A DNA stretch of 63,377 nucleotides, the filler included, from Octopus bimaculoides (taxonomy: Eukaryota): the NCBI RefSeq assembly GCF_001194135.2. It is 6 parts of 5 records of this genome, joined end to end, with 100 filler letters (N's around TTAATTAATTAA, not from the genome) between each part and the next. Parts side by side here need not be neighbours in the genome. Positions count along the whole stretch, not along the records: positions 9,289 to 22,114 come from NC_069005.1; 5 more parts are not named here. One strand, 5' to 3'. Shown in pieces: positions 9,189 through 58,284 of this stretch (position 1 is its first letter; each line of letters opens with the position of its first letter). The translations under genes and the position numbers were made by a program. Below the pieces are notes generated by a model. The model was not told the origin of the DNA. It was given only the letters and a program-made list of their open reading frames with translations, and ran no database searches.

Positions 9189-10524
9189 NNNNNNNNNNNN
9201 NNNNNNNNNNNNNNNNNNNNNNNNNNNNNNNNTTAATTAATTAANNNNNNNNNNNNNNNNNNNNNNNNNNNNNNNNNNNNNNNNNNNNTTCATTTTTAAA
9301 GTGAAAGTATTTGACATGAGTGTTTTTGTTTCACTTTTGACACTTAATACTTAAATAGTGGAGGAGATATTATGTTGCCGTGTGCTCGAACTCTGCAAGA
9401 AGTTAATAATTTTTTTTGACTAAAACACAACTGGAACCCTAAGTAAGGCATGTGTAAAATTTGAATGAAATTGGTTGCGTAGTTCTCGAGTTTTAGGGAT
9501 TCACACAGACAGACAGACAGTCAGACACACATTCTCATTTTTATATATATAGATAATCGTTCTTATTAAATGTCTAAATACCTTTAATGTTTTAGACATT
9601 TCCCTACCAAGAGCACTTACTAGAAATTCAGTATATTGTATTCTCATTGAATATATTTGATTAACGATATCTATATATTTCGTTTTGGGATTTGGTTTGC
9701 AAGATTCTTTATGCGAGTTTGTGTGTTGAAGCATATTCTGTTGTGCCTGGGGAGAGTCATTTTCTTTTTGTGCCTTATAATTTAACACACACACCGGTAA
9801 CATTTCTACTTATTCCTTATTTTTATTTTCCTTGCGTCTTGCAACCTTTTCAATAGTCCTGACTCCGTCCGTTATTTACACTGCGTTCCTTTTTGTTTGT
9901 TTGTGCGCGTGTATGTGTGTGTGTGCCTATTCATGCATGTATGTATGTATGCATGTGTGTGCATGCATATGTATGTGTGTGCATCTATATGTATGTTTTC
10001 TGCATATTCATGTGCTTACGTGTCCGTGTTTGTGTTTTTTATGTATGTGTGTGTGGACACATGTCTCCATATGTATCCTTGTGTGAAATAAAGTGCGTGT
10101 GTATATATGGTCATGTGTTTCAGTTTCCATTTGCGTATGTGTGCTTGTCTGTTCATATAACCTATGTACCTATCCGTCTGTATGTCTCCCCTATGTATGG
10201 CATACATAGGGGAGACATATAGACGGATAGGTACAAACAGCACCATACACAGGTTGATATTTTAATATCAAAGATCCCTATGGATCACACAGGTTGTAAT
10301 CCTTTGAAACATATGTAGAAATAAAGTATGCAATTATAACATGCGTTTTCTCCAATCCTTAAATTCTTGAATATACTCAAATACCCAAAATTTCAAGGAG
10401 TTCCTGCCTTAAAAACAGGAGCTAACCACAGTTATTTTGTGTTCTTTGCTACATTGGTTTCTATTAACCCATTTATTCTATCAGAAGAATTTTTATTCAT
10501 TAAGATAGAAGAAATACACATAAT

Positions 10525-10561
<37 letters not shown>

Positions 10562-10679
10562 ATCTATCAGTGTTTGTCCTTCCCTACTACCAGTGTTGGT
10601 GTATACGTTCCCGTAACTTAGCAGTTTGGCAACAGAGGCGACAAAGTAAGTAACAGGCGTAAAGAAATAAGTAAGGAGG

Positions 10680-11624
10680 TTGATTTGTTCCCCAAATTCT
10701 TCAAGATAGTCATCAACAGCAGATATGATATCATCACTGCAAATCCGGTTCCTTGCCAAGTGTGTTTTCATGCTGGGGAACAGATGATAGTCAAATTTGG
10801 CCAAATCACAAGAATAGGGAAGCTACAGTCACACATAGCAGTCACTGAAAGCAAGGACTTGTGTGCTGGAACATTATCCTCGTGAAACAAGACCCCTTTC
10901 ATCAGTTTCCTGGGCATTTGGTCTTGATAGCCTTTCATGACTGCCCCCAGTAAGTTGGTATAGTACTCTTAATCGATAGTGTGGCCCTTTTGAAGGAAAT
11001 CAATAAGCACAATGCTTTTTGTATCTCCAAAACTGGAGCCATCACCTTCCTGGCAAATGAAACGACCTTGGCCTCCTTTGGAACAGGTGAGGGGTGTTTC
11101 CACTGCATGGATTGTCTCTCTGTCTTTGACTCAAGGTGATGAATCCAACAATCATCCTAGCTTAGGAAAGGTTCAAGGAAACCAGCTGGATCTGCATCAA
11201 ACACTGTCAGATTTTCCCATGATGTGATCAGCCTGCTGTGCTTTTAATCAGGTGTCAAACGACGTCGCAGCCACCAAATAGAAACCTTCGTCACGCCAAG
11301 TTCATTGTGCAGAATATTCTTTACTGTATCACGGGATAGCATTGACTATTTGATTTATAATCAATCCCCTGTCATCCATCACCATGTGGTGAACACGATC
11401 AATGTTTTCCCTGGTGGTAACAGTTGTAGGACGTCTAGACTTTGGGTCATTTTTAAGACTCTCCTTTCCCCTCCTAAATTCACCCCCCCCCACTTTTGCA
11501 CTGTTGATAAAGCTGAAGCGTCAACCCCTTATGTAACAATCATGTCAGCATAAATGTCTTTGGGGGCTAAAAACCCAATTTTCTGCAAGTACTTGATAAC
11601 ATCACGATGCCAAATTTTGTCCAT
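10680..11624 (-). pseudogene. Decayed mariner (DD34D) transposase
   Basis: MDKIWHRDVIKYLQK...TVQKW..EFRRGKESLKNDPKSRRP...DYHLFPSMK, with stops and frameshifts. Confidence 0.88.
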
Positions 11625-12890: not shown

Positions 12891-13305
12891 ATGGTCACCA
12901 TGGTTAATTACCGGTTGAGTTTACTGATAGTCGCATCTGCTATTGCTCTTCCCTGGTTACTAACCACATTAGGATGTTGTCCAGACTTCCTTGTTGATAT
13001 TGCTAACTGGTTAAAAGTCACCGATCTTCTCAGCCAGGTGAAAAATGTGTGGAGTTTTCCATATTCATTTGGTTCCAAAAAGTCGGATAACGATCATTCA
13101 ACCCCAGTGTCCGCATCGCCTCACACTTTAGATCCAGACAAGCTAGAAGAAACAGCTTCGGGCGTTTTCACAAAGTCCGAACTGTCTAAATACACAGGTG
13201 AACGAGAGTCAGCTCCTATTTATCTAGCTGTCTTAGGCCAGGTTTTTGATGTCAGTTCAGGCAGGAAATTTTATGGTCCAGGAAATCCCTACAGTTTCTT
13301 CTCAG
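12891..13305 (+). CDS. CYB5D2: Neuferricin (cytochrome b5 domain-containing 2, MAPR family) exon 1 of 4
   Basis: Hydrophobic N-terminus, then FTKSELSKYTG...[30 protein letters not shown] (cyt-b5-like heme/steroid-binding domain). Donor G|GTGAG at 13306, phase 1. Start could be 12891 or 12900. Confidence 0.93.
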
Positions 13306-13988: not shown

Positions 13989-14421
13989 ACCAAACTTCTC
14001 ATGAGGCCTCAAGATACTTCCTGATGTAAGCACAAGACCAAAGAAGAAATTTATGAACTCATTTTCTGATTTCTGCTATTATCACTCAATGCAGGGTAAG
14101 CTTTTATTGGCCACTGTTATTGTAATGAATTCCAAGCCATATCAGATGCTATATTTTGGGGACACAACATGAAATTGAGGTCCTAGCACTGTGGTGAAAC
14201 ACATCTCTTGATTATGAGTTCAAATCCACTTCCAGTCCATAGTCTACTGCACATCTTGCCAACCTTGGATAATTTCTGTAGCGTGCGCGTGCACACACAC
14301 ACACACACACACACACACGATAATGCAAACGGAAAATAGAACTCAAAATATGAGTATATATATTTGTTAAAATGAAATTAATTCAGTTTAATACCATTTG
14401 AACATTTGGATATCATTTCAG

Positions 14422-14562
14422 GTCGAGATGCTTCTGGTGCTTTTGTGACTGGAGATTTCACAGAGAAGGGCTTGACTGATGACATTGAGGGCTTTACAGG
14501 AAACCAGTTAATAGGTATTGGAGAATGGGTTGACTTTTATAAAGAAAACTACAAACATATCG
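14422..14562 (+). CDS. CYB5D2: Neuferricin exon 2 (141 nt, phase 1-1)
   Basis: Acceptor tcatttcag|, GRDASGAFVTGDFTEKGLTDDIEG...EWVDFYKENYKHIG, donor G|GTAAGT at 14563. Continues the exon 1 frame. Confidence 0.95.
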
Positions 14563-14577
14563 GTAAGTACCAGGCAT

Positions 14578-15091
14578 ACAAGGCACATTCCAAAATTTTT
14601 CAGACTTTTTCAAGAGAGATATTTTATAATTTTAAAGAAGTACAAAACCCTAATTTCCTTCCAAGGAGGACCTTCTGACTTCTATGCACTTACTGTAGTG
14701 CTCCAGCCACATTGTGAAGGCCCCATGGAAGTCCTCTAAAGTGAAGGTGTCCAGGACGCTTGTTACAGCCTCCTTCATTTTCAAAATGAAGGCAAAGTTG
14801 AGGTTCTCCTTCAGCTTGGGGAACAACCAAAAGTCACAGGGAGAAAGGTCTGGACTGTAGGGTGGGTGTGGTACAGTTTTGACGCCCATCTCTGTCAAGT
14901 TATTGATACCAGTATGGTATTGAGGTGCACTGTCCTGGAGCAGATGCCACAGACCTGAGTAAAAGAGCTCTGGCTCTTGTGATGAAACTTCTTCCTGAAC
15001 TCTCCCAAAGTACTCTTTGTTAACTGTTTGGTCAGAAGAAACCCAGTGGATGTAGATGATGCCCTTGTTGTTGAAAAAGGGAATTCATTTT
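14578..15091 (-). mobile_element. 5'-truncated mariner remnant
   Basis: HPPYSPDLSPCDFWLFPKLK motif. TIR-like TACAAGGCACATTCCAAAATTTTTCAGACT at 14578. Confidence 0.88.
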
Positions 15092-15580
15092 AATGGCATT
15101 AAACTGAATTAATTTGTTCAGTTTAACAAATATAGATACACATTTTGAGTTCTATTTTTCCAGTTTGCATCACCATATGTGTGCGTGCATGTATGTGCGT
15201 GTGTGTGCATGAGTGCTACAGAAATTATCCAAGGTTGGCAAGATGTGCAGTAGACTATGGACTGGGAGTGAATTTGAACTCACAATCAAGAGATGTGTTT
15301 CACCACTGTGCTAGGACCTCAATCTTTTGGTAGACTTTCTTTGCCTAGCTTCTTGAGTCAGCAAAAAACAGATACTTGGCTCAGACTGCTTAATCCGTAA
15401 GCTGTCTGGAGTAATTCATAAGTCTTACCCAGTTTAACTCAAACCTTTATTGCATAGTGAGCTTTCAAATTGTCTTCATATCTGTTTCCTTCAAGCTAGA
15501 ATAAAATGTTGGCAGGTGAGCTTATTAGATGTATAGTAATGAGACACTAGAATCACAATGATGTAGGACGTGTATGTATG

Positions 15581-15611
<31 letters not shown>

Positions 15612-16399
15612 NNNNNNNNNNNNNNNNNNNNNNNNNNNNNNNNNNNNNNNNNNNNNNNNNNNNNNNNNNNNNNNNNNNNNNNNNNNNNNNNNNNNNNNNN
15701 NNNNNNNNNNNNNNNNNNNNNNNNNNNNNNNNNNNNNNNNNNNNNNNNNNNNNNNNNNNNNNNNNNNNNNNNNNNNNNNNNNNNNNNNNNNNNNNNNNNN
15801 NNNNNNNNNNNNNNNNNNNNNNNNNNNNNNNNNNNNNNNNNNNNNNNNNNNNNNNNNNNNNNNNNNNNNNNNNNNNNNNNNNNNNNNNNNNNNNNNNNNN
15901 NNNNNNNNNNNNNNNNNNNNNNNNNNNNNNNNNNNNNNNNNNNNNNNNNNNNNNNNNNNNNNNNNNNNNNNNNNNNNNNNNNNNNNNNNNNNNNNNNNNN
16001 NNNNNNNNNNNNNNNNNNNNNNNNNNNNNNNNNNNNNNNNNNNNNNNNNNNNNNNNNNNNNNNNNNNNNNNNNNNNNNNNNNNNNNNNNNNNNNNNNNNN
16101 NNNNNNNNNNNNNNNNNNNNNNNNNNNNNNNNNNNNNNNNNNNNNNNNNNNNNNNNNNNNNNNNNNNNNNNNNNNNNNNNNNNNNNNNNNNNNNNNNNNN
16201 NNNNNNNNNNNNNNNNNNNNNNNNNNNNNNNNNNNNNNNNNNNNNNNNNNNNNNNNNNNNNNNNNNNNNNNNNNNNNNNNNNNNNNNNNNNNNNNNNNNN
16301 NNNNNNNNNNNNNNNNNNNNNNNNNNNNNNNNNNNNNNNNNNNNNNNNNNNNNNNNNNNNNNNNNNNNNNNNNNNNNNNNNNNNNNNNNNNNNNNNNGG

Positions 16400-17018: not shown

Positions 17019-17188
17019 GAACATTAAATGTCCATTCTGATTGAACTAGTACTTTCATGCATTAAACTATGCAATCTTCAGGTTCATGTAGTAGTGGTGA
17101 CAGTTATGCTTTACAATTTACAACTGTCAGTTGTAAATTTACATCTGTCAGAAAGTACTAGTTCAATCAGGATGGACATTTAATATTC
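17019..17188. repeat. 38-bp inverted repeat with an internal 25-bp palindrome
   Basis: Arms 17019-17056 and 17151-17188 (36/38). AATTTACAACTG-T-CAGTTGTAAATT at 17115-17139. Confidence 0.9.
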
Positions 17189-17192
17189 ATTT

Positions 17193-17342
17193 ATGGCAGG
17201 TGCTAGCGTAACGAAAACAGCCAAAATGTTTGGTGTATCAAGAAGTACTGTCTCAAAAGTAATGACAACCTTTGAGAAAGAGGGAAAAACTTCCTCGTCA
17301 AAACGAAACTCTGGAAGAAAACCAAAACTTTCAGATAGGGAC
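17193..17342 (+). pseudogene. Tc1-like transposase N-terminal HTH fragment
   Basis: MAGASVTKTAKMFGVSRSTVSKVMTTFEKEGKTSSSKRNSGRKPKLSDRD (HTH + GRKPK linker), cut off by a family D repeat. Confidence 0.85.
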
Positions 17343-17349
17343 AGTTAGA

Positions 17350-17705
17350 ATTTTCTTCAGGTTGAGTAGCCAATCCTGCTCAAAAGGTCCCTGAATAAGG
17401 GTTGTTTAAGGATGTTGAACAAAACACCCATGTTTCCAGAGGTGAATTATCCAAATCCCAAAGAATTCCTCTCAACACATGGTTATGATGCTCCCCCACT
17501 ACTTCTGCTCATGATCAGAGATGCACATATCGTCAGCCACCAAGGGATATGCTCAACTGATTAAGGTCAAACAACTGACAAGCAAATCTGTGGTACTGAG
17601 CAGAATATTTGCTGTAACCCATTTTTTATACGAAGACAAAACAATGTACATGATAACACTTCCAATCAGTTAAGATCAGAAGCCATGAGAGCCACTGCCT
17701 GGTAC
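17350..17705 (-). mobile_element. Interspersed repeat family D
   Basis: Reverse complement matches 39150-39590 (+, (AAT)n tail) and 19051-19150 (+). Confidence 0.85.
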
Positions 17706-18010: not shown

Positions 18011-18194
18011 GCTACGTTTCTGGTAAGTTCTATACCAATGATGGTAAGCCTACAAAAGTCTTGGAAAGAATCAATGCAAAGGTTGCAAAATTTAACAAAC
18101 AGCAAGAAATGGATAAATTAAGAGCCAGCAGACCACCTTGCAACATAGAAACAGACCATAAAACAGGCACCAAAGTGTGGTGCACACAAAAGAG
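18011..18194 (+). CDS. CYB5D2: Neuferricin exon 3 (184 nt, phase 1-2)
   Basis: Acceptor ttacttctag|, GYVSGKFYTNDGKPT...RPPCNIETDHKTGTKVWCTQK, donor AG|GTATGT. PPCN...WC is typical of neuferricin. Confidence 0.93.
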
Positions 18195-19790
18195 GTATGT
18201 GGTTATAATTTGGGCTGTCTATTCAAATAGTGTTAAGTTTAACTTCACCTTTTTTCCTTTTAGGGCCCATAATAATTAAGTACCAGTGGGATACAAGGGA
18301 TACACATAACCTGTTATAACTATACCCTGCCAAATTTTTAATCTTGTTTCTATACCACAAAAATAATTATTTTAAGGTAATTTTCCCTGCTAAAGTAGTT
18401 GTTAGCCTGATGGACTCCCATTTTGCACTATCCCCAACATTCTTTCTCATCAACCTTCTTACTCTTATTTGCTCCCCATCATCTTTAATCATGTCTCTCT
18501 TGGTTTTCCCATTTCTCTTCTTTCACAGTCATTCCCATCTTTCTTCTCAGTTGCTTACTATCTTCCTTCCTCATCACAGGACTCATCCATTTCATCCCAT
18601 TTCTCTTTACAGCATGCCCCCACTGGTTCAATTTCTATCATTCTCTGAAATTCTTTGCTTCTCTTTCTCTCTCTCCCCTACATTATATAGGGGAGGGTGG
18701 AAATACTCTTGTCCACATTCATAGGTTTTTTTTTTTATCTTTCTCTACTGCTCTTCATTCATGACCTATGTCTTGCATCCAGAAATCCAAGCAATTTTTA
18801 TTGTTTGGAAGTAGCTTTAGAGCAACCAAGAACGAACCACCTGGCATAATTGTCTTGGCTCTTTACATTCTGAGTTAAAATTCTGTCTAGGCCCACTTGC
18901 TTGTCATCCTTCTAAGGTCAATGAAATAAACTACCAGTTTATCTAAAGTACACTGGGGAGTTGATTTAATGAAGTAACTTCTCTCAAATTTATGACCTTG
19001 TGCCTAAATTGGAAATCATGCTGTGTAGCAAAATTTTAACTTTAAACCACCTGAGCATGTCCCTTAGTGGTTGACAATTTGTGCATCTCTGATGATGAGC
19101 AGGAGTAGTGGGGGAGCATGTAAGCCATGTGTTGAGAGGGATTCTTTGGATTATGAATAAATGTAAGAAAAGCAAATTTTGAAAGAAATGTTAGCCGTTT
19201 TTTAATACTTTCTGGGGGTAAGCAAATAAGAAATAACAGCTGCTAACCCAAGGACAAAAATCATGTTACACAGTGTTATTGGTTTCAAATTTTGGCTCGT
19301 AGTCAGTAATTTCAAAGAAGAAGGTAAGTTGATTACATTGACTGCAATGCTCAACTGGTACTTATTGTATTGACCTTAAAAGGATGAAAGGCAAAGTTGA
19401 CCTCAGCAACATTTGAACTCAGAGCCATGTGGTTGAGAAGCAAGCTTTTTACCACACAACCACATTTTCTCCTAAAAGCAGCATTATTAGTTAAATGAAG
19501 TCCTCAAAAGATGCTTAACCAGCCTCCTAGTACTATATTCTCAATATACAAAGCTACTGTTTGGCTCACCATTTGGTGCTCCAGAGACTTCTTTTTCCTT
19601 CTGTCACTACTCCTTCAATATGATCTTAGAAGTCTGTATATGTTTGTGTGTGTATTTTTTGAGTTTGTATGTTTCAATGCATGTATTTATCAGTCATTTT
19701 GTTTATGTTGAACTATGCAATGTTTTAAAAAGCAAACAAAATCACAACTTAGCCTTAACTAACTATTCTTCTATATAACACAACCCTACT

Positions 19791-21406: not shown

Positions 21407-21611
21407 TGGTGGTGTGCTGCGGAATTGGGTTGGTGTGCCACGTCTGATGTACAGACCAGGGGACAGCACGCTGTCATGTGTGTGTGTACAGCTGTCATCC
21501 TTGACTGAACATGAAAAACGCTCATCTGCAATTCGAAGCTACCCAGGGTGTGAACCAACATCCACGTCTTGTAAAGTCCCCAACAACTTCAACATGGACA
21601 CCCTTTTATAG
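21407..21611 (+). CDS. CYB5D2: Neuferricin exon 4 (terminal)
   Basis: Acceptor tttggcag|, SGGVLRNWVGVPRLMYRPG...CVCV...YPGCEPTSTSC, stop TAG. Joined CDS 415+141+184+205=945 nt = 314 aa + stop. Confidence 0.94.
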
Positions 21612-55426: not shown

Positions 55427-57346
55427 CGCACACACACACACACACACACATATGAAATTCTGATTTATGTATGAAATTAATGTGAAAGTGATTTAATACT
55501 TTTCTTCTTGGTAATATCTACATGGTTTTATTTTCCCTTTGTGTTTACCTCTGTACTGAATAACATCCATAGTTGAATCTTTTATGATAAACACGTGTAT
55601 ATATATATATGTATATATAATATATCAACATACGTAGCATTTTTATTATGTGCTCTATGTGAGCAATAATTGAAAGTATTATCTATATACGAATTCAGCT
55701 GAAGACGACCTCAAACTTAACTTGTCTAGAGGGTGCAGCTTAAAATGATCTTAAAACATATTCATCTGAAAAGAACTTAGACCGTTCCAATGTGTCTGCA
55801 GGTGGCGTTATCATGAATAAGATGGAATTTATTTAATTTAAGCTGAGAAGAGTATTGACAGAAGTTATCCTCTGTGATCTGCAGTAACTACTTCTAGTTT
55901 ACGGTGTAGCTTACAACAATAATTATTTGTCCCATTATACACTTTAATTAACATTTATTACTTAAGCATACTATTAGAAATAGGCTTATAAATTGCATTT
56001 CTCTTTCTTTCATTCATTCAGCTGTTCTTTCTTTGTTTGCACTAGCACATTTGGGAACAAATTAAAATCGATATCCGTCTTCGTATATAACAAAACCCCT
56101 TTTAGAATTTTCTTGTCGCCTTCAAATAATTTCAATGATATTACTTTCATCATCTCTAGGAAGCTTCTTATGTGATATTGATTAGTTTTTCAATCTTTAT
56201 CTGAGGCTGGCTGTTCGTTCTTGACTGCTTTTAGTTTACGGCATTCAAATATGGTGAATGTGTATAAGAATACTTCTTTCTACTAGCGAAGAATGAGGAT
56301 TATACATACTTAACTTACATACAGGAGGAATACAGTTAGATACAAAATATATTCAAGTGCAGTTAATAATTTTGATTCATTTTGTAAAGCTAAGTACTCG
56401 ACGACATTGTAGTCAACTTCCCCTAATATTTCAGGATTCAAACAATATCATAGACAACTGTTAGATGTCTTCTAACCGGAAGCTTTTTACATACATTAGT
56501 AATTGATCAAAAGATACAAAGGCTAACAATGAACTTTCATTTACACACTTCAGTTTCTTTGTTTAGATGATTATTCACTTCTGCTATCTCCGAATGAAAT
56601 AATAGACAACATCAAGAAACCATACAAATACAGGAAAAGTGATATGTTAATTATTGTTCTATGCTAATGTAAATATATATGAAGATAAATGCGAAGCGAT
56701 GTAAGGATAAATAATTTGAAATAACGAGTTCCTTTGACTGTACATATTTGTGTGAAAAGAGAATAATCGATTGATATGAACTTAATATATTTATTCATTC
56801 CTCGTTATTTAATCCAGATATAGCTATTGTTTCTTTAGTATGATGGTCCTCTAGAATTAAGAAAAGTCTAGATTGAGCATAAACAAATTGATAGGATAAA
56901 AGCAACTGGAATGAAGGACCAAACTTTAAACCTATATTATTGACAGTAGGCGAATAGGAACATCACTCATTCTGAAATGATTATATAACTCATTGAAGTA
57001 GTTATTTCAAGAAGGGGACTCGATTAACTTGAACGGGCCTGATTAAAAGTGCCACACGACCAAAACATCATTGACTAGCAGAAACTCCATAAATTCTCCA
57101 ATAAGAGAGCAAGAATGAGGAGACTAAACTCGCGTAGGTAAGTAAGAATATAGTATCCATGTCATGCAGTCGTTGTCTCTCCATGAAATCGGAATTGTCT
57201 GTACAAGTACAAAAGTGTTGCAGACGTCAGATGTCCAAAAGATCGCAGGGTATTGTGAAGTGTAGTGTTTCGCTCAAAACCACAACGAGCATCTCGGTCC
57301 AGGTATCAATACCACAGTCGCTAGAGTACCAATCTAAACAGGCGTC

Positions 57347-57417
<71 letters not shown>

Positions 57418-58284
57418 NNNNNNNNNNNNNNNNNNNNNNNNNNNNNNNNNNNNNNNNNNNNNNNNNNNNNNNNNNNNNNNNNNNNNNNNNNNNNNNNNNN
57501 NNNNNNNNNNNNNNNNNNNNNNNNNNNNNNNNNNNNNNNNNNNNNNNNNNNNNNNNNNNNNNNNNNNNNNNNNNNNNNNNNNNNNNNNNNNNNNNNNNNN
57601 NNNNNNNNNNNNNNNNNNNNNNNNNNNNNNNNNNNNNNNNNNNNNNNNNNNNNNNNNNNNNNNNNNNNNNNNNNNNNNNNNNNNNNNNNNNNNNNNNNNN
57701 NNNNNNNNNNNNNNNNNNNNNNNNNNNNNNNNNNNNNNNNNNNNNNNNNNNNNNNNNNNNNNNNNNNNNNNNNNNNNNNNNNNNNNNNNNNNNNNNNNNN
57801 NNNNNNNNNNNNNNNNNNNNNNNNNNNNNNNNNNNNNNNNNNNNNNNNNNNNNNNNNNNNNNNNNNNNNNNNNNNNNNNNNNNNNNNNNNNNNNNNNNNN
57901 NNNNNNNNNNNNNNNNNNNNNNNNNNNNNNNNNNNNNNNNNNNNNNNNNNNNNNNNNNNNNNNNNNNNNNNNNNNNNNNNNNNNNNNNNNNNNNNNNNNN
58001 NNNNNNNNNNNNNNNNNNNNNNNNNNNNNNNNNNNNNNNNNNNNNNNNNNNNNNNNNNNNNNNNNNNNNNNNNNNNNNNNNNNNNNNNNNNNNNNNNNNN
58101 NNNNNNNNNNNNNNNNNNNNNNNNNNNNNNNNNNNNNNNNNNNNNNNNNNNNNNNNNNNNNNNNNNNNNNNNNNNNNNNNNNNNNNNNNNNNNNNNNNNN
58201 NNNNNNNNNNNNNNNNNNNNNNNNNNNNNNNNNNNNNNNNNNNNNNNAAATCATTAAAGGCATTCTTTGTCATATTATTTGGAT

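What the first reader, a model, noticed from the sequence alone, without database searches (positions are those of the whole stretch)
14174..15323. A ~225-bp inverted duplication brackets the in-frame exon 2 of neuferricin
Arms 14174-14398 and 15092-15323 are near-perfect reverse complements (4 mismatches in the outer 109 bp, including A.C and G.U on the sense RNA). They include non-SINE AT-rich sequence, so this looks like a local duplication rather than two chance SINEs. The left arm ends 23 nt before the 3' splice site and covers candidate branch-point TTAAT motifs. Exon 2 is 141 nt and phase 1-1, so skipping is in frame and deletes GRDAS...ENYKHI, the second half of the heme-binding domain. 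Back-splicing would give a stop-free 47-codon circle with no in-frame AUG. Established: exon-flanking inverted repeats promote circRNA and skipping, long dsRNA is an ADAR substrate, and coleoids edit extensively. Inference: a structure- or editing-controlled switch of heme binding in neuferricin. Caveat: 141 nt is short for a single-exon circle.
Basis: partly seen in the sequence, partly recalled or inferred. Interest (0 to 1): 0.82.

Follow-up and report, generated by a model that had tools for sequence, protein, structure and literature searches.

The report
Transposon-derived inverted repeat around neuferricin exon 2
Exon 2 of the octopus neuferricin gene really is bracketed by a roughly 225-base inverted repeat that should fold into a long RNA duplex, but the repeat is old transposon debris drifting neutrally in a genome full of such repeats, so the proposed haem-binding switch is an untested idea.

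Summary
Arms 14174-14398 and 15092-15323 are reverse complements: 86% over 236 columns and 105/109 in the outer part. They flank the 141-nt, phase 1-1 exon 2 of Octopus bimaculoides neuferricin, and both arms sit at orthologous positions in O. sinensis and O. vulgaris. The repeat is therefore not an assembly artefact and is at least about 34 My old.

The right arm lies inside a decayed mariner transposase gene. In the two other species the left arm also carries 31 nt of that mariner coding sequence. The unit therefore spans a mariner/filler junction, which supports a segmental inverted duplication rather than two clean SINE insertions.

The arms diverge between species at the local intronic rate (about 5%). 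Almost all changes are uncompensated. Later SINE insertions split both arms in O. sinensis and O. vulgaris. Comparable inverted-repeat pairs occur about once per 3 kb in these loci, and exon 3 is bracketed too.

The predicted duplex is strong (-311 kcal/mol, longest helix 56 bp) and covers the candidate branch points. ADAR hyper-editing and some exon-2 skipping or back-splicing are therefore plausible. The only transcript-level hint is an O. vulgaris gene model that joins exon 1 to exon 3. A regulated switch is unsupported. Interest is low to moderate.

The parts
12891..13305 (+). Neuferricin exon 1. It encodes the signal/TM-like N-terminus and the first half of the cytochrome b5-like domain, including FYGPGNPYSFFSG. 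It ends in phase 1.
   Evidence: Translation and GT donor; 100% match to XP_014778686; domain limits
14174..14398 (+). Left arm of the inverted repeat, sense to the gene. It has three parts: a 109-nt head (14174-14282) with tRNA-promoter-like A box TAGCACTGTGG and B-box-like GAGTTCAAATCC, a (GY)/(CA)n tract (14283-14318), and an AT-rich tail (14319-14398).
   Evidence: the box motifs were read by eye only
14378..14392 (+). Candidate branch-point motifs UUAAU. The branch A would be at 14381 or 14391, which is 40 or 30 nt upstream of the acceptor. They lie inside the last 20 nt of the left arm, so they fall within the predicted duplex.
   Evidence: Sequence; paired in the MFE and cofold structures; branch-point use is inferred
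14422..14562 (+). Neuferricin exon 2, 141 nt, phase 1-1. It encodes RDASGAFV...ENYKHIG, the second half of the haem-binding domain.
14650..15084 (-). Remnant of the C-terminal (catalytic) half of a mariner transposase gene, containing ...PHPPYSPDLSPCDFWLFPKLK... It directly abuts the inner end of the right arm.
   Evidence: Translation; phmmer hit to SETMAR 3f2k E=2.8e-8 and to Mos1
15092..15323 (-). Right arm of the inverted repeat, antisense to the gene. The head is about 15215-15323 and the tail about 15092-15171. It sits as filler between the N-terminal and C-terminal pieces of the mariner remnant. About 125 codons of the transposase are missing at this point.
15324..15495 (-). Remnant of the mariner N-terminal (HTH) region, ..VKLGKTYELLQTAYGLSSLSQVSVFC*LKKLGKESLPK. 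Its last 31 nt or so are also found outside the left arm in O. sinensis and O. vulgaris.
   Evidence: Translation. The assignment was made by eye against the other mariner copy in the window (RRGKESLKNDPKSRRP); no database hit supports it.
15612..16397 (.). Assembly gap (786 N) in intron 2, 290 nt beyond the right arm.
18011..18194 (+). Neuferricin exon 3 (184 nt). This is the acceptor used when exon 2 is skipped.
21407..21611 (+). Neuferricin last coding exon.

Best explanation
Origin. The feature is an old inverted segmental duplication of transposon-derived sequence. One copy (right arm) lies in intron 2, embedded in an internally deleted mariner element. It consists of a filler of about 225 nt: a tRNA-promoter-like head, a CA microsatellite and an AT-rich tail. 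The other copy (left arm) lies in intron 1 and ends 23 nt before the exon-2 acceptor. Ancestrally it carried the same filler plus 31 nt of the adjoining mariner coding sequence. [quoted passage not shown]

Evolution since then. Both arms have drifted at the neutral intronic rate.

Mechanism (inferred). In the pre-mRNA the two arms, which have no competing partner inside either intron, pair into an imperfect duplex of about 210 bp. This loops out exon 2 and buries the likely branch points. The most probable consequences, in order:
1. Clustered A-to-I hyper-editing of both arms by ADAR, as for other nearby inverted repeats in metazoan introns.
2. A minor fraction of transcripts that skip exon 2. 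Skipping is in frame and gives a 267-aa protein that keeps the first half of the b5 fold but lacks the second.
3. At most a rare 141-nt circular RNA.

I regard these as by-products of transposon insertion history, not an evolved switch.

What is shown and what is inferred. Shown: the anatomy, the age, the neutral divergence and the folding potential. Inferred: pairing in vivo, editing, and any effect on splicing.
For: - Repeat and geometry.
- Right arm inside a mariner remnant.
- The 31 extra nt of mariner-derived homology outside the left arm in O. sinensis and O. vulgaris differ from the right-arm copies at 4-5 of 31 positions. The homology is therefore old, not a recent conversion.
- Both arms are orthologous in three species. 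The divergence time comes from PMC10700109.
- Neutral drift. Between O. bimaculoides and O. vulgaris the head differs at 5/109 in each arm, and the arm blocks at 5.2-5.3%, against 5.2-8.0% in the flanking intron and exons. Head differences between the arms are all lineage-specific and uncompensated, except position 63 in O. sinensis.
- Later SINE insertions split both arms in O. sinensis and O. vulgaris.
- Folding. The arms pair in the MFE of the 1.2-kb pre-mRNA segment. Cofold gives -311 kcal/mol against -102 +/- 4 for shuffled controls, 209/225 nt paired, longest helix 56 bp. The outer parts still pair at -287 and -308 kcal/mol in O. sinensis and O. vulgaris.
- No competing copy in the gene.
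- Background frequency: 24 inverted-repeat pairs per 73 kb and 10 per 28.6 kb (>=100 nt, >=80%, spacer <=3 kb). Exon 3 is also bracketed (pair I3).
- Literature. Nearby inverted repeats are the conventional ADAR substrate in metazoans, with O. bimaculoides among the species profiled (PMC9989829). Editing in O. vulgaris is mostly in introns and 3'UTR hairpins, and circRNAs are low (PMC9699675). Inverted repeats of 30-40 nt suffice for back-splicing in minigenes (PMC4201285).
- Hint of skipping: O. vulgaris model CAI9740663 (...FFSG|YVSGKF...).
Against: - No RNA data could be examined, so pairing, editing, skipping and circularisation are all unverified.
- At the time of speciation the 109-nt heads of the two arms had no fixed differences, while the tail had 4 in about 80 nt (Fisher p = 0.03). 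This could mean gene conversion or some constraint on the head rather than pure drift.
- One site (head position 63) changed in parallel in both arms of O. sinensis and preserves the pair.
- The O. vulgaris annotation contains a skipped model and a model with an upstream exon joined to exon 2, but no canonical exon 1-2-3 model. If that reflects real transcripts, exon 2 usage may be less constitutive than I assume.
- The inner end of the left/right homology falls within about 10 nt of the filler/mariner junction. That placement is a mild coincidence under a random segmental duplication.
Confidence: 0.6

Rival explanations
1. The inverted repeat is a functional, structure- or ADAR-editing-controlled switch. 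It tunes inclusion of exon 2 (or production of a circular exon-2 RNA) and so toggles haem binding by neuferricin.
For: - The duplex is strong, has no competitor and covers the candidate branch points.
- Skipping is in frame and removes half of the domain.
- The architecture is retained in three species over about 34 My.
- An exon-2-less CDS is annotated in O. vulgaris.
- The heads of the two arms were identical at speciation, and one paired site co-varied in O. sinensis.
Against: - The divergence rate equals that of the neighbouring intron.
- 4 mismatches in O. bimaculoides and 7 in O. sinensis in the 109-nt head are uncompensated.
- SINE insertions of about 400 and 280 nt (plus about 350 nt more in O. 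vulgaris) interrupt both arms. They move the main duplex about 470 nt from the acceptor and widen the spacer from 0.7 to 1.9-3.1 kb without loss of the gene.
- Such repeat pairs occur about once per 3 kb, so retention for 34 My at 5% divergence needs no selection.
- There is no skipped isoform in the O. bimaculoides or O. sinensis annotations.
- circRNAs are low in octopus, and 141 nt is short for a single-exon circle.
Confidence: 0.1
2. The two arms are independent insertions of the same dispersed repeat, in opposite orientation by chance. The repeat would be either a tRNA-derived SINE or a mobilised mariner deletion derivative that carries the filler. The functional consequences would be the same as in the best explanation; only the origin differs.
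For: - The head has A-box and B-box-like motifs with a simple-repeat plus AT-rich tail, as SINEs do (by eye).
- The inner end of the homology coincides with the end of the filler.
- The O. bimaculoides left arm is flanked by TGAA...TGAA.
- Octopus introns are packed with SINEs and mariner remnants.
- A genome-wide copy count was impossible with these tools.
Against: - The left arm in O. sinensis and O. vulgaris carries 31 nt of mariner coding sequence outside the filler, which a SINE retrotransposition would not bring.
- The left copy has no other mariner sequence and no terminal inverted repeats.
- No further copy exists in about 120 kb of Octopus DNA, although other SINE families recur many times there.
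- There are no arm-derived peptides among 5.8 billion clustered proteins or 1.84 billion representatives.
Confidence: 0.25
3. One arm is an assembly artefact of the draft O. bimaculoides genome.
For: The assembly is short-read based, and a 786-N gap lies 290 nt from the right arm. The chromosome-scale version is the same sequence re-scaffolded.
Against: Both arms, exon 2 and the mariner remnant are collinear in the independent O. sinensis (GCA_006345805.1) and O. vulgaris (GCA_951406725.2) assemblies. Each carries species-specific substitutions and insertions.
Confidence: 0.01

Closest known systems
Exon-flanking inverted repeats (inverted Alu pairs and other reverse-complementary matches) that promote back-splicing and exon skipping in animals
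   Same: Reverse-complementary transposon-derived sequences lie in the two introns flanking an internal exon, with no within-intron competitor. They are far longer than the 30-40 nt shown to suffice in minigenes (PMC4201285). ADAR is reported to antagonise such circularisation (cited in PMC9699675).
   Different: No back-splice or skip junction has been observed here. The exon is only 141 nt. The two copies appear to come from one local duplication of a mariner/filler junction, not from two members of an abundant SINE family.
[quoted passage not shown]
   Same: It meets the operational criterion used in PMC9989829: a reverse-complement alignment of >=80% identity and >=50 nt within +/-2 kb. 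Here the values are 86% over 236 nt with a 694-nt spacer. It is intronic and repeat-derived, and the organism has very active ADARs.
   Different: Editing at this locus was not examined. The repeat is not evolutionarily young (at least 34 My), whereas young repeats are the main targets described.
Internally deleted mariner/Tc1 elements carrying foreign filler DNA
   Same: The N-terminal HTH piece and the C-terminal catalytic half of one transposase reading frame are separated by an unrelated 225-nt insert. About 125 codons are missing.
   Different: No terminal inverted repeats or TA target duplication could be found. The filler looks like a SINE but was not shown to be one. Part of the element was copied in inverted orientation to the other side of a host exon.
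Neuferricin (CYB5D2), MAPR family of cytochrome b5-like haem/steroid-binding proteins
   Same: 100% identical to the annotated O. bimaculoides neuferricin. The domain matches MAPR structures 1j03/1t0g (E about 4e-19) and PGRMC1 4x8y (E 2.8e-15), and Pfam Cyt-b5.
   Different: Nothing unusual in the protein itself. A 267-aa exon-2-less form is annotated only in O. vulgaris.

Membership tests
Intramolecular dsRNA-forming inverted repeat (criterion of PMC9989829) | Reverse-complement alignment of >=80% identity and >=50 nt within a few kb on the same transcript | tested here: met
   86% over 236 columns, spacer 694 nt, both arms within one pre-mRNA. Cofold -311 kcal/mol against -102 for shuffled controls.
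Intramolecular dsRNA-forming inverted repeat (ADAR substrate) | Clustered A-to-G differences between RNA and DNA in the arms | not testable with these tools
   No RNA reads were available. The supplements of PMC9699675 do not mention the gene.
circRNA / skipping-promoting exon-flanking complementary repeats | Complementary sequences in the two introns immediately flanking the exon, without stronger within-intron partners | tested here: met
   The left arm is in intron 1 and the right arm in intron 2. No other copy exists in the 12.8-kb piece.
circRNA / skipping-promoting exon-flanking complementary repeats | Observed back-splice (14562>14422) or skip (13305^18011) junctions | tested here: inconclusive
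   An exon 1-exon 3 CDS is annotated in O. vulgaris (CAI9740663; pipeline), but the reads were not seen. There is none in O. bimaculoides or O. sinensis. No circRNA data exist for the locus.
tRNA-derived SINE | tRNA-related head with internal pol III A and B boxes | tested here: inconclusive
   A box TAGCAC(T/A)GTGG and B-box-like GAGTTCAAATCC are seen by eye, 33 nt apart. ARAGORN and the Rfam tRNA model find nothing. However, the same Rfam search also missed an obvious tRNA-like SINE head in L003, so the negative result is uninformative.
tRNA-derived SINE | Many dispersed copies with defined ends and target-site duplications | tested here: not met
   There are only the two copies in about 120 kb of Octopus DNA and no peptide matches. 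The flanks share mariner sequence instead of unrelated targets. A genome-wide count was not possible.
mariner/Tc1 transposon remnant | DDE/D transposase catalytic domain | tested here: met
   The C-terminal half matches SETMAR 3f2k (E 2.8e-8) and Mos1 (E 1e-4). Pfam gave no hit.
mariner/Tc1 transposon remnant | Terminal inverted repeats flanked by a TA duplication | tested here: not met
   No candidate terminal repeats were found in the window or in O. sinensis. The element is decayed.
Neuferricin / MAPR | Cytochrome b5-like haem/steroid-binding domain after an N-terminal hydrophobic segment | tested here: met
   Pfam PF00173 E 1.1e-9; PDB MAPR hits covering residues 93-188; identity to XP_014778686.

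The most novel reading that the evidence does not exclude
The inverted repeat is kept pairable. The evidence would be the head homogenised by gene conversion or held by selection (0 fixed differences in 109 nt at speciation against 4 in about 80 nt of the tail, and one co-varying pair in O. sinensis). Its ADAR- or temperature-sensitive duplex would then set the ratio of full-length neuferricin to an in-frame form that lacks half of the haem pocket. That would be a conserved, RNA-structure-gated toggle of a haem-binding protein in octopuses.
Probability: 0.06. Interest if true: 0.7.

Novelty: new member of a known kind. Interest (0 to 1): 0.25.

Why it matters
If exon 2 skipping were frequent and regulated, this would be a concrete case in a cephalopod where a transposon-derived intronic duplex gates a protein's cofactor binding. 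ADAR activity is exceptionally high in cephalopods, and the case would be easy to test with a minigene.

As the evidence stands, the locus mainly illustrates how densely octopus introns are seeded with inverted repeats that can form dsRNA. It also shows that such pairs can persist for tens of millions of years without selection.

It has practical value as a caution for annotation. The O. vulgaris gene set lacks the canonical neuferricin model and instead has a skipped form and a form with a SINE-derived upstream exon.

Tried and rejected
1. Rfam gave a sub-threshold SCARNA7 match on both arms (43.6 and 25.3 bits; gathering score 65). The alignment shows it rests on the (UG)n tract and AU-rich sequence, with 171 model positions skipped. 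Rejected as spurious.
2. ARAGORN and the Rfam tRNA model found nothing in the arms. The Rfam control region with a clear tRNA-like SINE head in L003 was also missed, so this says nothing either way.
3. A protein search with the open antisense frame of the head (41 aa) found no candidate among 5.8 billion proteins.
4. The exhaustive search of 1.84 billion representatives gave two hits. Both are repeat-protein artefacts: a bacterial adhesin-like repeat protein and an ankyrin protein.
5. An exact-pattern scan of metagenome contigs for the head gave 0 hits.
6. I searched with the exon-2 read-through ORF to fish genomic contigs from other octopods. Only a fish protein came back.
7. Logan contigs carrying exon 1 of another octopod (L004-L006, about 1.2 kb) end about 200 nt into intron 1 and do not reach the left arm.
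8. The search for mariner terminal inverted repeats found none. The two mariner remnants in the window are unrelated at the DNA level.
9. Pfam did not recognise the mariner fragments. The PDB sequence search did.
10. The literature has no paper that mentions both neuferricin and octopus. The supplements of PMC9699675 have no entry for the gene.
Full report
**1. Observation**

The repeat is real and placed correctly. The repeat finder reports arms 14174-14318 / 15179-15323 (145 nt, 89% complementary) and 14292-14376 / 15117-15201. Gapped blastn joins them into 14174-14398 against 15323-15092, 86% over 236 columns, E about 1e-74. There is no third copy in the 12.8-kb piece (alignment).

Each arm has three parts:
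- a 109-nt head that differs between the arms at 4 sites;
- a diverged (CA)n/(GY)n tract;
- an AT-rich tail of about 80 nt.

Exon 2 is 14422-14562 (141 nt, phase 1-1). The left arm ends 23 nt before its acceptor. Joining exon 1 to exon 3 keeps the frame. The 141-nt circle is stop-free and has no AUG in the coding frame.

**2. The gene**

The spliced product is 100% identical to O. bimaculoides neuferricin XP_014778686. The coding exons are 12891-13305, 14422-14562, 18011-18194 and 21407-21611. Residues 93-188 match MAPR/cytochrome b5-like structures: 1j03 and 1t0g at E about 4e-19, PGRMC1 4x8y at E 2.8e-15, and Pfam PF00173. Exon 2 encodes residues 139-185, the second half of that domain.

**3. 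What the arms are**

The right arm lies inside a decayed mariner element on the minus strand.
- Directly inside it (15084 down to 14650) runs the C-terminal catalytic half of a transposase...PHPPYSPDLSPCDFWLFPKLK.... This matches SETMAR (E 2.8e-8) and Mos1.
- Directly outside it (15324-15495) runs an N-terminal HTH-like stretch ending ..VFC*LKKLGKESLPK. I assigned this by eye against the other mariner remnant in the window, which reads RRGKESLKNDPKSRRP.
- About 125 codons are missing between the two pieces, so the arm is a 225-nt filler inside an internally deleted mariner.

The head has an A box (TAGCACAGTGG) and a B-box-like motif (GAGTTCAAATCC). It may therefore derive from a tRNA-type SINE, but I could not confirm this. 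ARAGORN and Rfam find no tRNA. A control SINE head in O. sinensis was also missed by the same Rfam search, so that negative result carries no weight. A sub-threshold SCARNA7 hit is an artefact of the UG repeat.

**4. Related species**

I fetched the orthologous loci of O. sinensis (L003) and O. vulgaris (L002) through the neuferricin proteins. Exons, both arms, the mariner remnant and the right flank are collinear in all three species. The repeat is therefore not an assembly artefact. It predates the O. bimaculoides / O. vulgaris-sinensis split, given as about 34 Mya in PMC10700109.

Two findings matter here.

First, in O. sinensis and O. vulgaris the left/right homology continues 31 nt further outward: GA(A/G)GCTAGGCAAAG(G/A)AAGTCTACCAAGAA. 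In the right copy this stretch is the mariner coding sequence ..(K/R)LGKESLPRN.
- These 31 nt differ between left and right at 4-5 positions, more than the head does. The shared flank is therefore old, not a recent conversion.
- In O. bimaculoides, 22 of these nt have been replaced by unrelated sequence.
- The ancestral unit thus spanned a mariner/filler junction. This argues for a segmental inverted duplication, or less likely two copies of one composite element, and against two independent SINE retrotranspositions.
- No further copy occurs in about 120 kb of Octopus DNA. Arm-derived peptides are absent from two very large protein collections. A true genome-wide count was not possible.

Second, both arms were later hit by other SINEs at the same TA-rich spot in the O. 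sinensis/vulgaris lineage.
- The left arm has a 396-nt insertion with a 10-nt target duplication, ATGAGTATAT.
- The right arm has an insertion of about 280 nt, plus a palindromic insertion of about 350 nt in O. vulgaris.
- These move the main paired block about 470 nt away from the acceptor and widen the spacer to 1.9 and 3.1 kb. The outer 200 nt or so can still pair, at -287 and -308 kcal/mol.

**5. Mode of evolution**

In the 109-nt head there is no difference that separates all left arms from all right arms. Every difference is specific to one lineage. Between O. bimaculoides and O. vulgaris each head differs at 5/109 (4.6%). The arm blocks differ at 5.2-5.3%, against 5.2-8.0% for neighbouring intron and exon blocks. 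The arms therefore drift like their surroundings.

The 4 mismatches in O. bimaculoides and the 7 in O. sinensis are uncompensated. The one exception is head position 63, which is G in both arms of O. sinensis.

The tail has 4 fixed left/right differences in about 80 nt, against 0 in 109 for the head (Fisher p = 0.03). This may reflect an episode of gene conversion before speciation, or a higher mutation rate in the AT-rich tail. It is weak evidence either way.

**6. Background frequency**

Self-comparison of the loci finds many inverted-repeat pairs of >=100 nt, >=80% identity and spacer <=3 kb: 24 in 73 kb of O. vulgaris and 10 in 28.6 kb of O. sinensis. That is about one per 3 kb. In this same gene, exon 3 is also bracketed, by 17447-17562 / 19045-19160 (116 nt, 84%). 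An exon flanked by an inverted repeat is therefore ordinary in this genome, although this pair is the longest and best matched in the piece.

**7. Likely mechanism**

The arms pair in the minimum-free-energy fold of the 1.2-kb pre-mRNA segment. As a bimolecular fold they give -311 kcal/mol against -102 +/- 4 for shuffled partners, with 209 of 225 left-arm nucleotides paired and a longest uninterrupted helix of 56 bp. The only yUnAy-type branch-point candidates near the acceptor (UUAAU at 14378-14382 and 14388-14392) lie inside the duplex.

From established knowledge:
- Nearby inverted repeats are the conventional ADAR substrate in metazoan introns (PMC9989829; PMC9699675).
- Exon-flanking complementary repeats can promote back-splicing, and 30-40 nt suffice in minigenes (PMC4201285).
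- That such repeats can shift an exon towards skipping is a further point I hold from my own knowledge of the inverted-Alu literature; I did not retrieve a paper for it.

I therefore expect hyper-editing of both arms, a minor exon-2-skipped fraction and at most a rare 141-nt circle. circRNAs are reported to be low overall in O. vulgaris.

**8. Transcript evidence**

None could be examined directly.

The O. vulgaris annotation was built with EVM/PASA from Iso-Seq and RNA-seq. It contains two models:
- CAI9740663 (267 aa) joins exon 1 to exon 3 exactly as predicted.
- CAI9740662 (188 aa) starts in a SINE-like exon 43 kb upstream and splices to exon 2.

It has no canonical 314-aa model. The NCBI annotations of O. 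bimaculoides and O. sinensis have the canonical form. O. bimaculoides also has an isoform with an alternative acceptor in the last exon. Neither has a skipped form. This is a hint that exon 2 can be skipped, not a measurement.

**9. Verdict**

The origin as a local inverted duplication is favoured, on new evidence. The functional switch remains speculation: I found neutral drift, disruption of the arms by later insertions in sister species, and a high background of similar repeats. The feature is a new instance of a well-known kind, a transposon-derived inverted repeat flanking an exon. The decisive data are junction counts, A-to-G clusters and a genome-wide copy count. All of these need read-level or whole-genome access that I did not have.

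Noticed in passing
window 17447-17562 and 19045-19160: A second inverted repeat (116 nt, 84% complementary) brackets exon 3 (18011-18194) of the same gene. Skipping exon 3 would shift the frame (184 nt).
   Followed up: partly
L003 11324-11719 and about 12918-13165; L002 54810-55203 and about 57320-57865: In O. sinensis and O. vulgaris both arms were hit at the same TA-rich position by later SINE insertions. The two inserts share a core of about 140 nt and have the same orientation relative to the arm, so they form a further inverted pair (L003 11535-11677 / 12916-13053, 87%). The left insert has a 10-nt target duplication, ATGAGTATAT. O. vulgaris has an extra palindromic insert of about 350 nt in the right arm.
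   Followed up: partly
window 14152-14173: In O. bimaculoides, 22 nt just outside the left arm replace the mariner-derived sequence present in O. sinensis and O. vulgaris. The replacement is exactly the same length and is flanked by conserved GA(T/A)GCTA and ATTGAGG. Its origin is unexplained.
   Followed up: partly
L002 10001-10027 (O. vulgaris): The annotated O. vulgaris protein CAI9740662 starts with MGMAQEWLC, encoded in a SINE-like sequence 43 kb upstream of exon 1, and splices to exon 2. The O. vulgaris gene set has no canonical exon 1-2-3-4 neuferricin model.
   Followed up: partly
window 10493-11553, minus strand: A second, unrelated mariner remnant lies upstream of the gene. Its ORFs read ...GKESLKNDPKSRRPTT......LFHEDNVPAHKS... 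and ...AKFDYHLFPSMKTHL... It shows no DNA similarity to the intron-2 remnant.
   Followed up: partly
window 17193-17348 (+), with the palindrome arms 17019-17056 / 17151-17188: A 51-aa ORF with a transposase-type helix-turn-helix lies in intron 2 (Pfam HTH_23 E 3e-6, weak HTH_SB). It sits next to a 38-nt, 95% inverted repeat and is probably a Tc1-like remnant.
   Followed up: no
window 15612-16397: A 786-N assembly gap in intron 2 lies 290 nt beyond the right arm. [quoted passage not shown]
   Followed up: partly
window 21407-21454: O. bimaculoides isoform X2 (XP_052832707, 298 aa) lacks SGGVLRNWVGVPRLMY. This corresponds to an alternative acceptor 48 nt into the last exon and is unrelated to the inverted repeat.
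   Followed up: no
window 10165-10235: A near-perfect 35-nt palindrome (97%, 1-nt loop) lies upstream of the gene, within simple-repeat-rich sequence.
   Followed up: no
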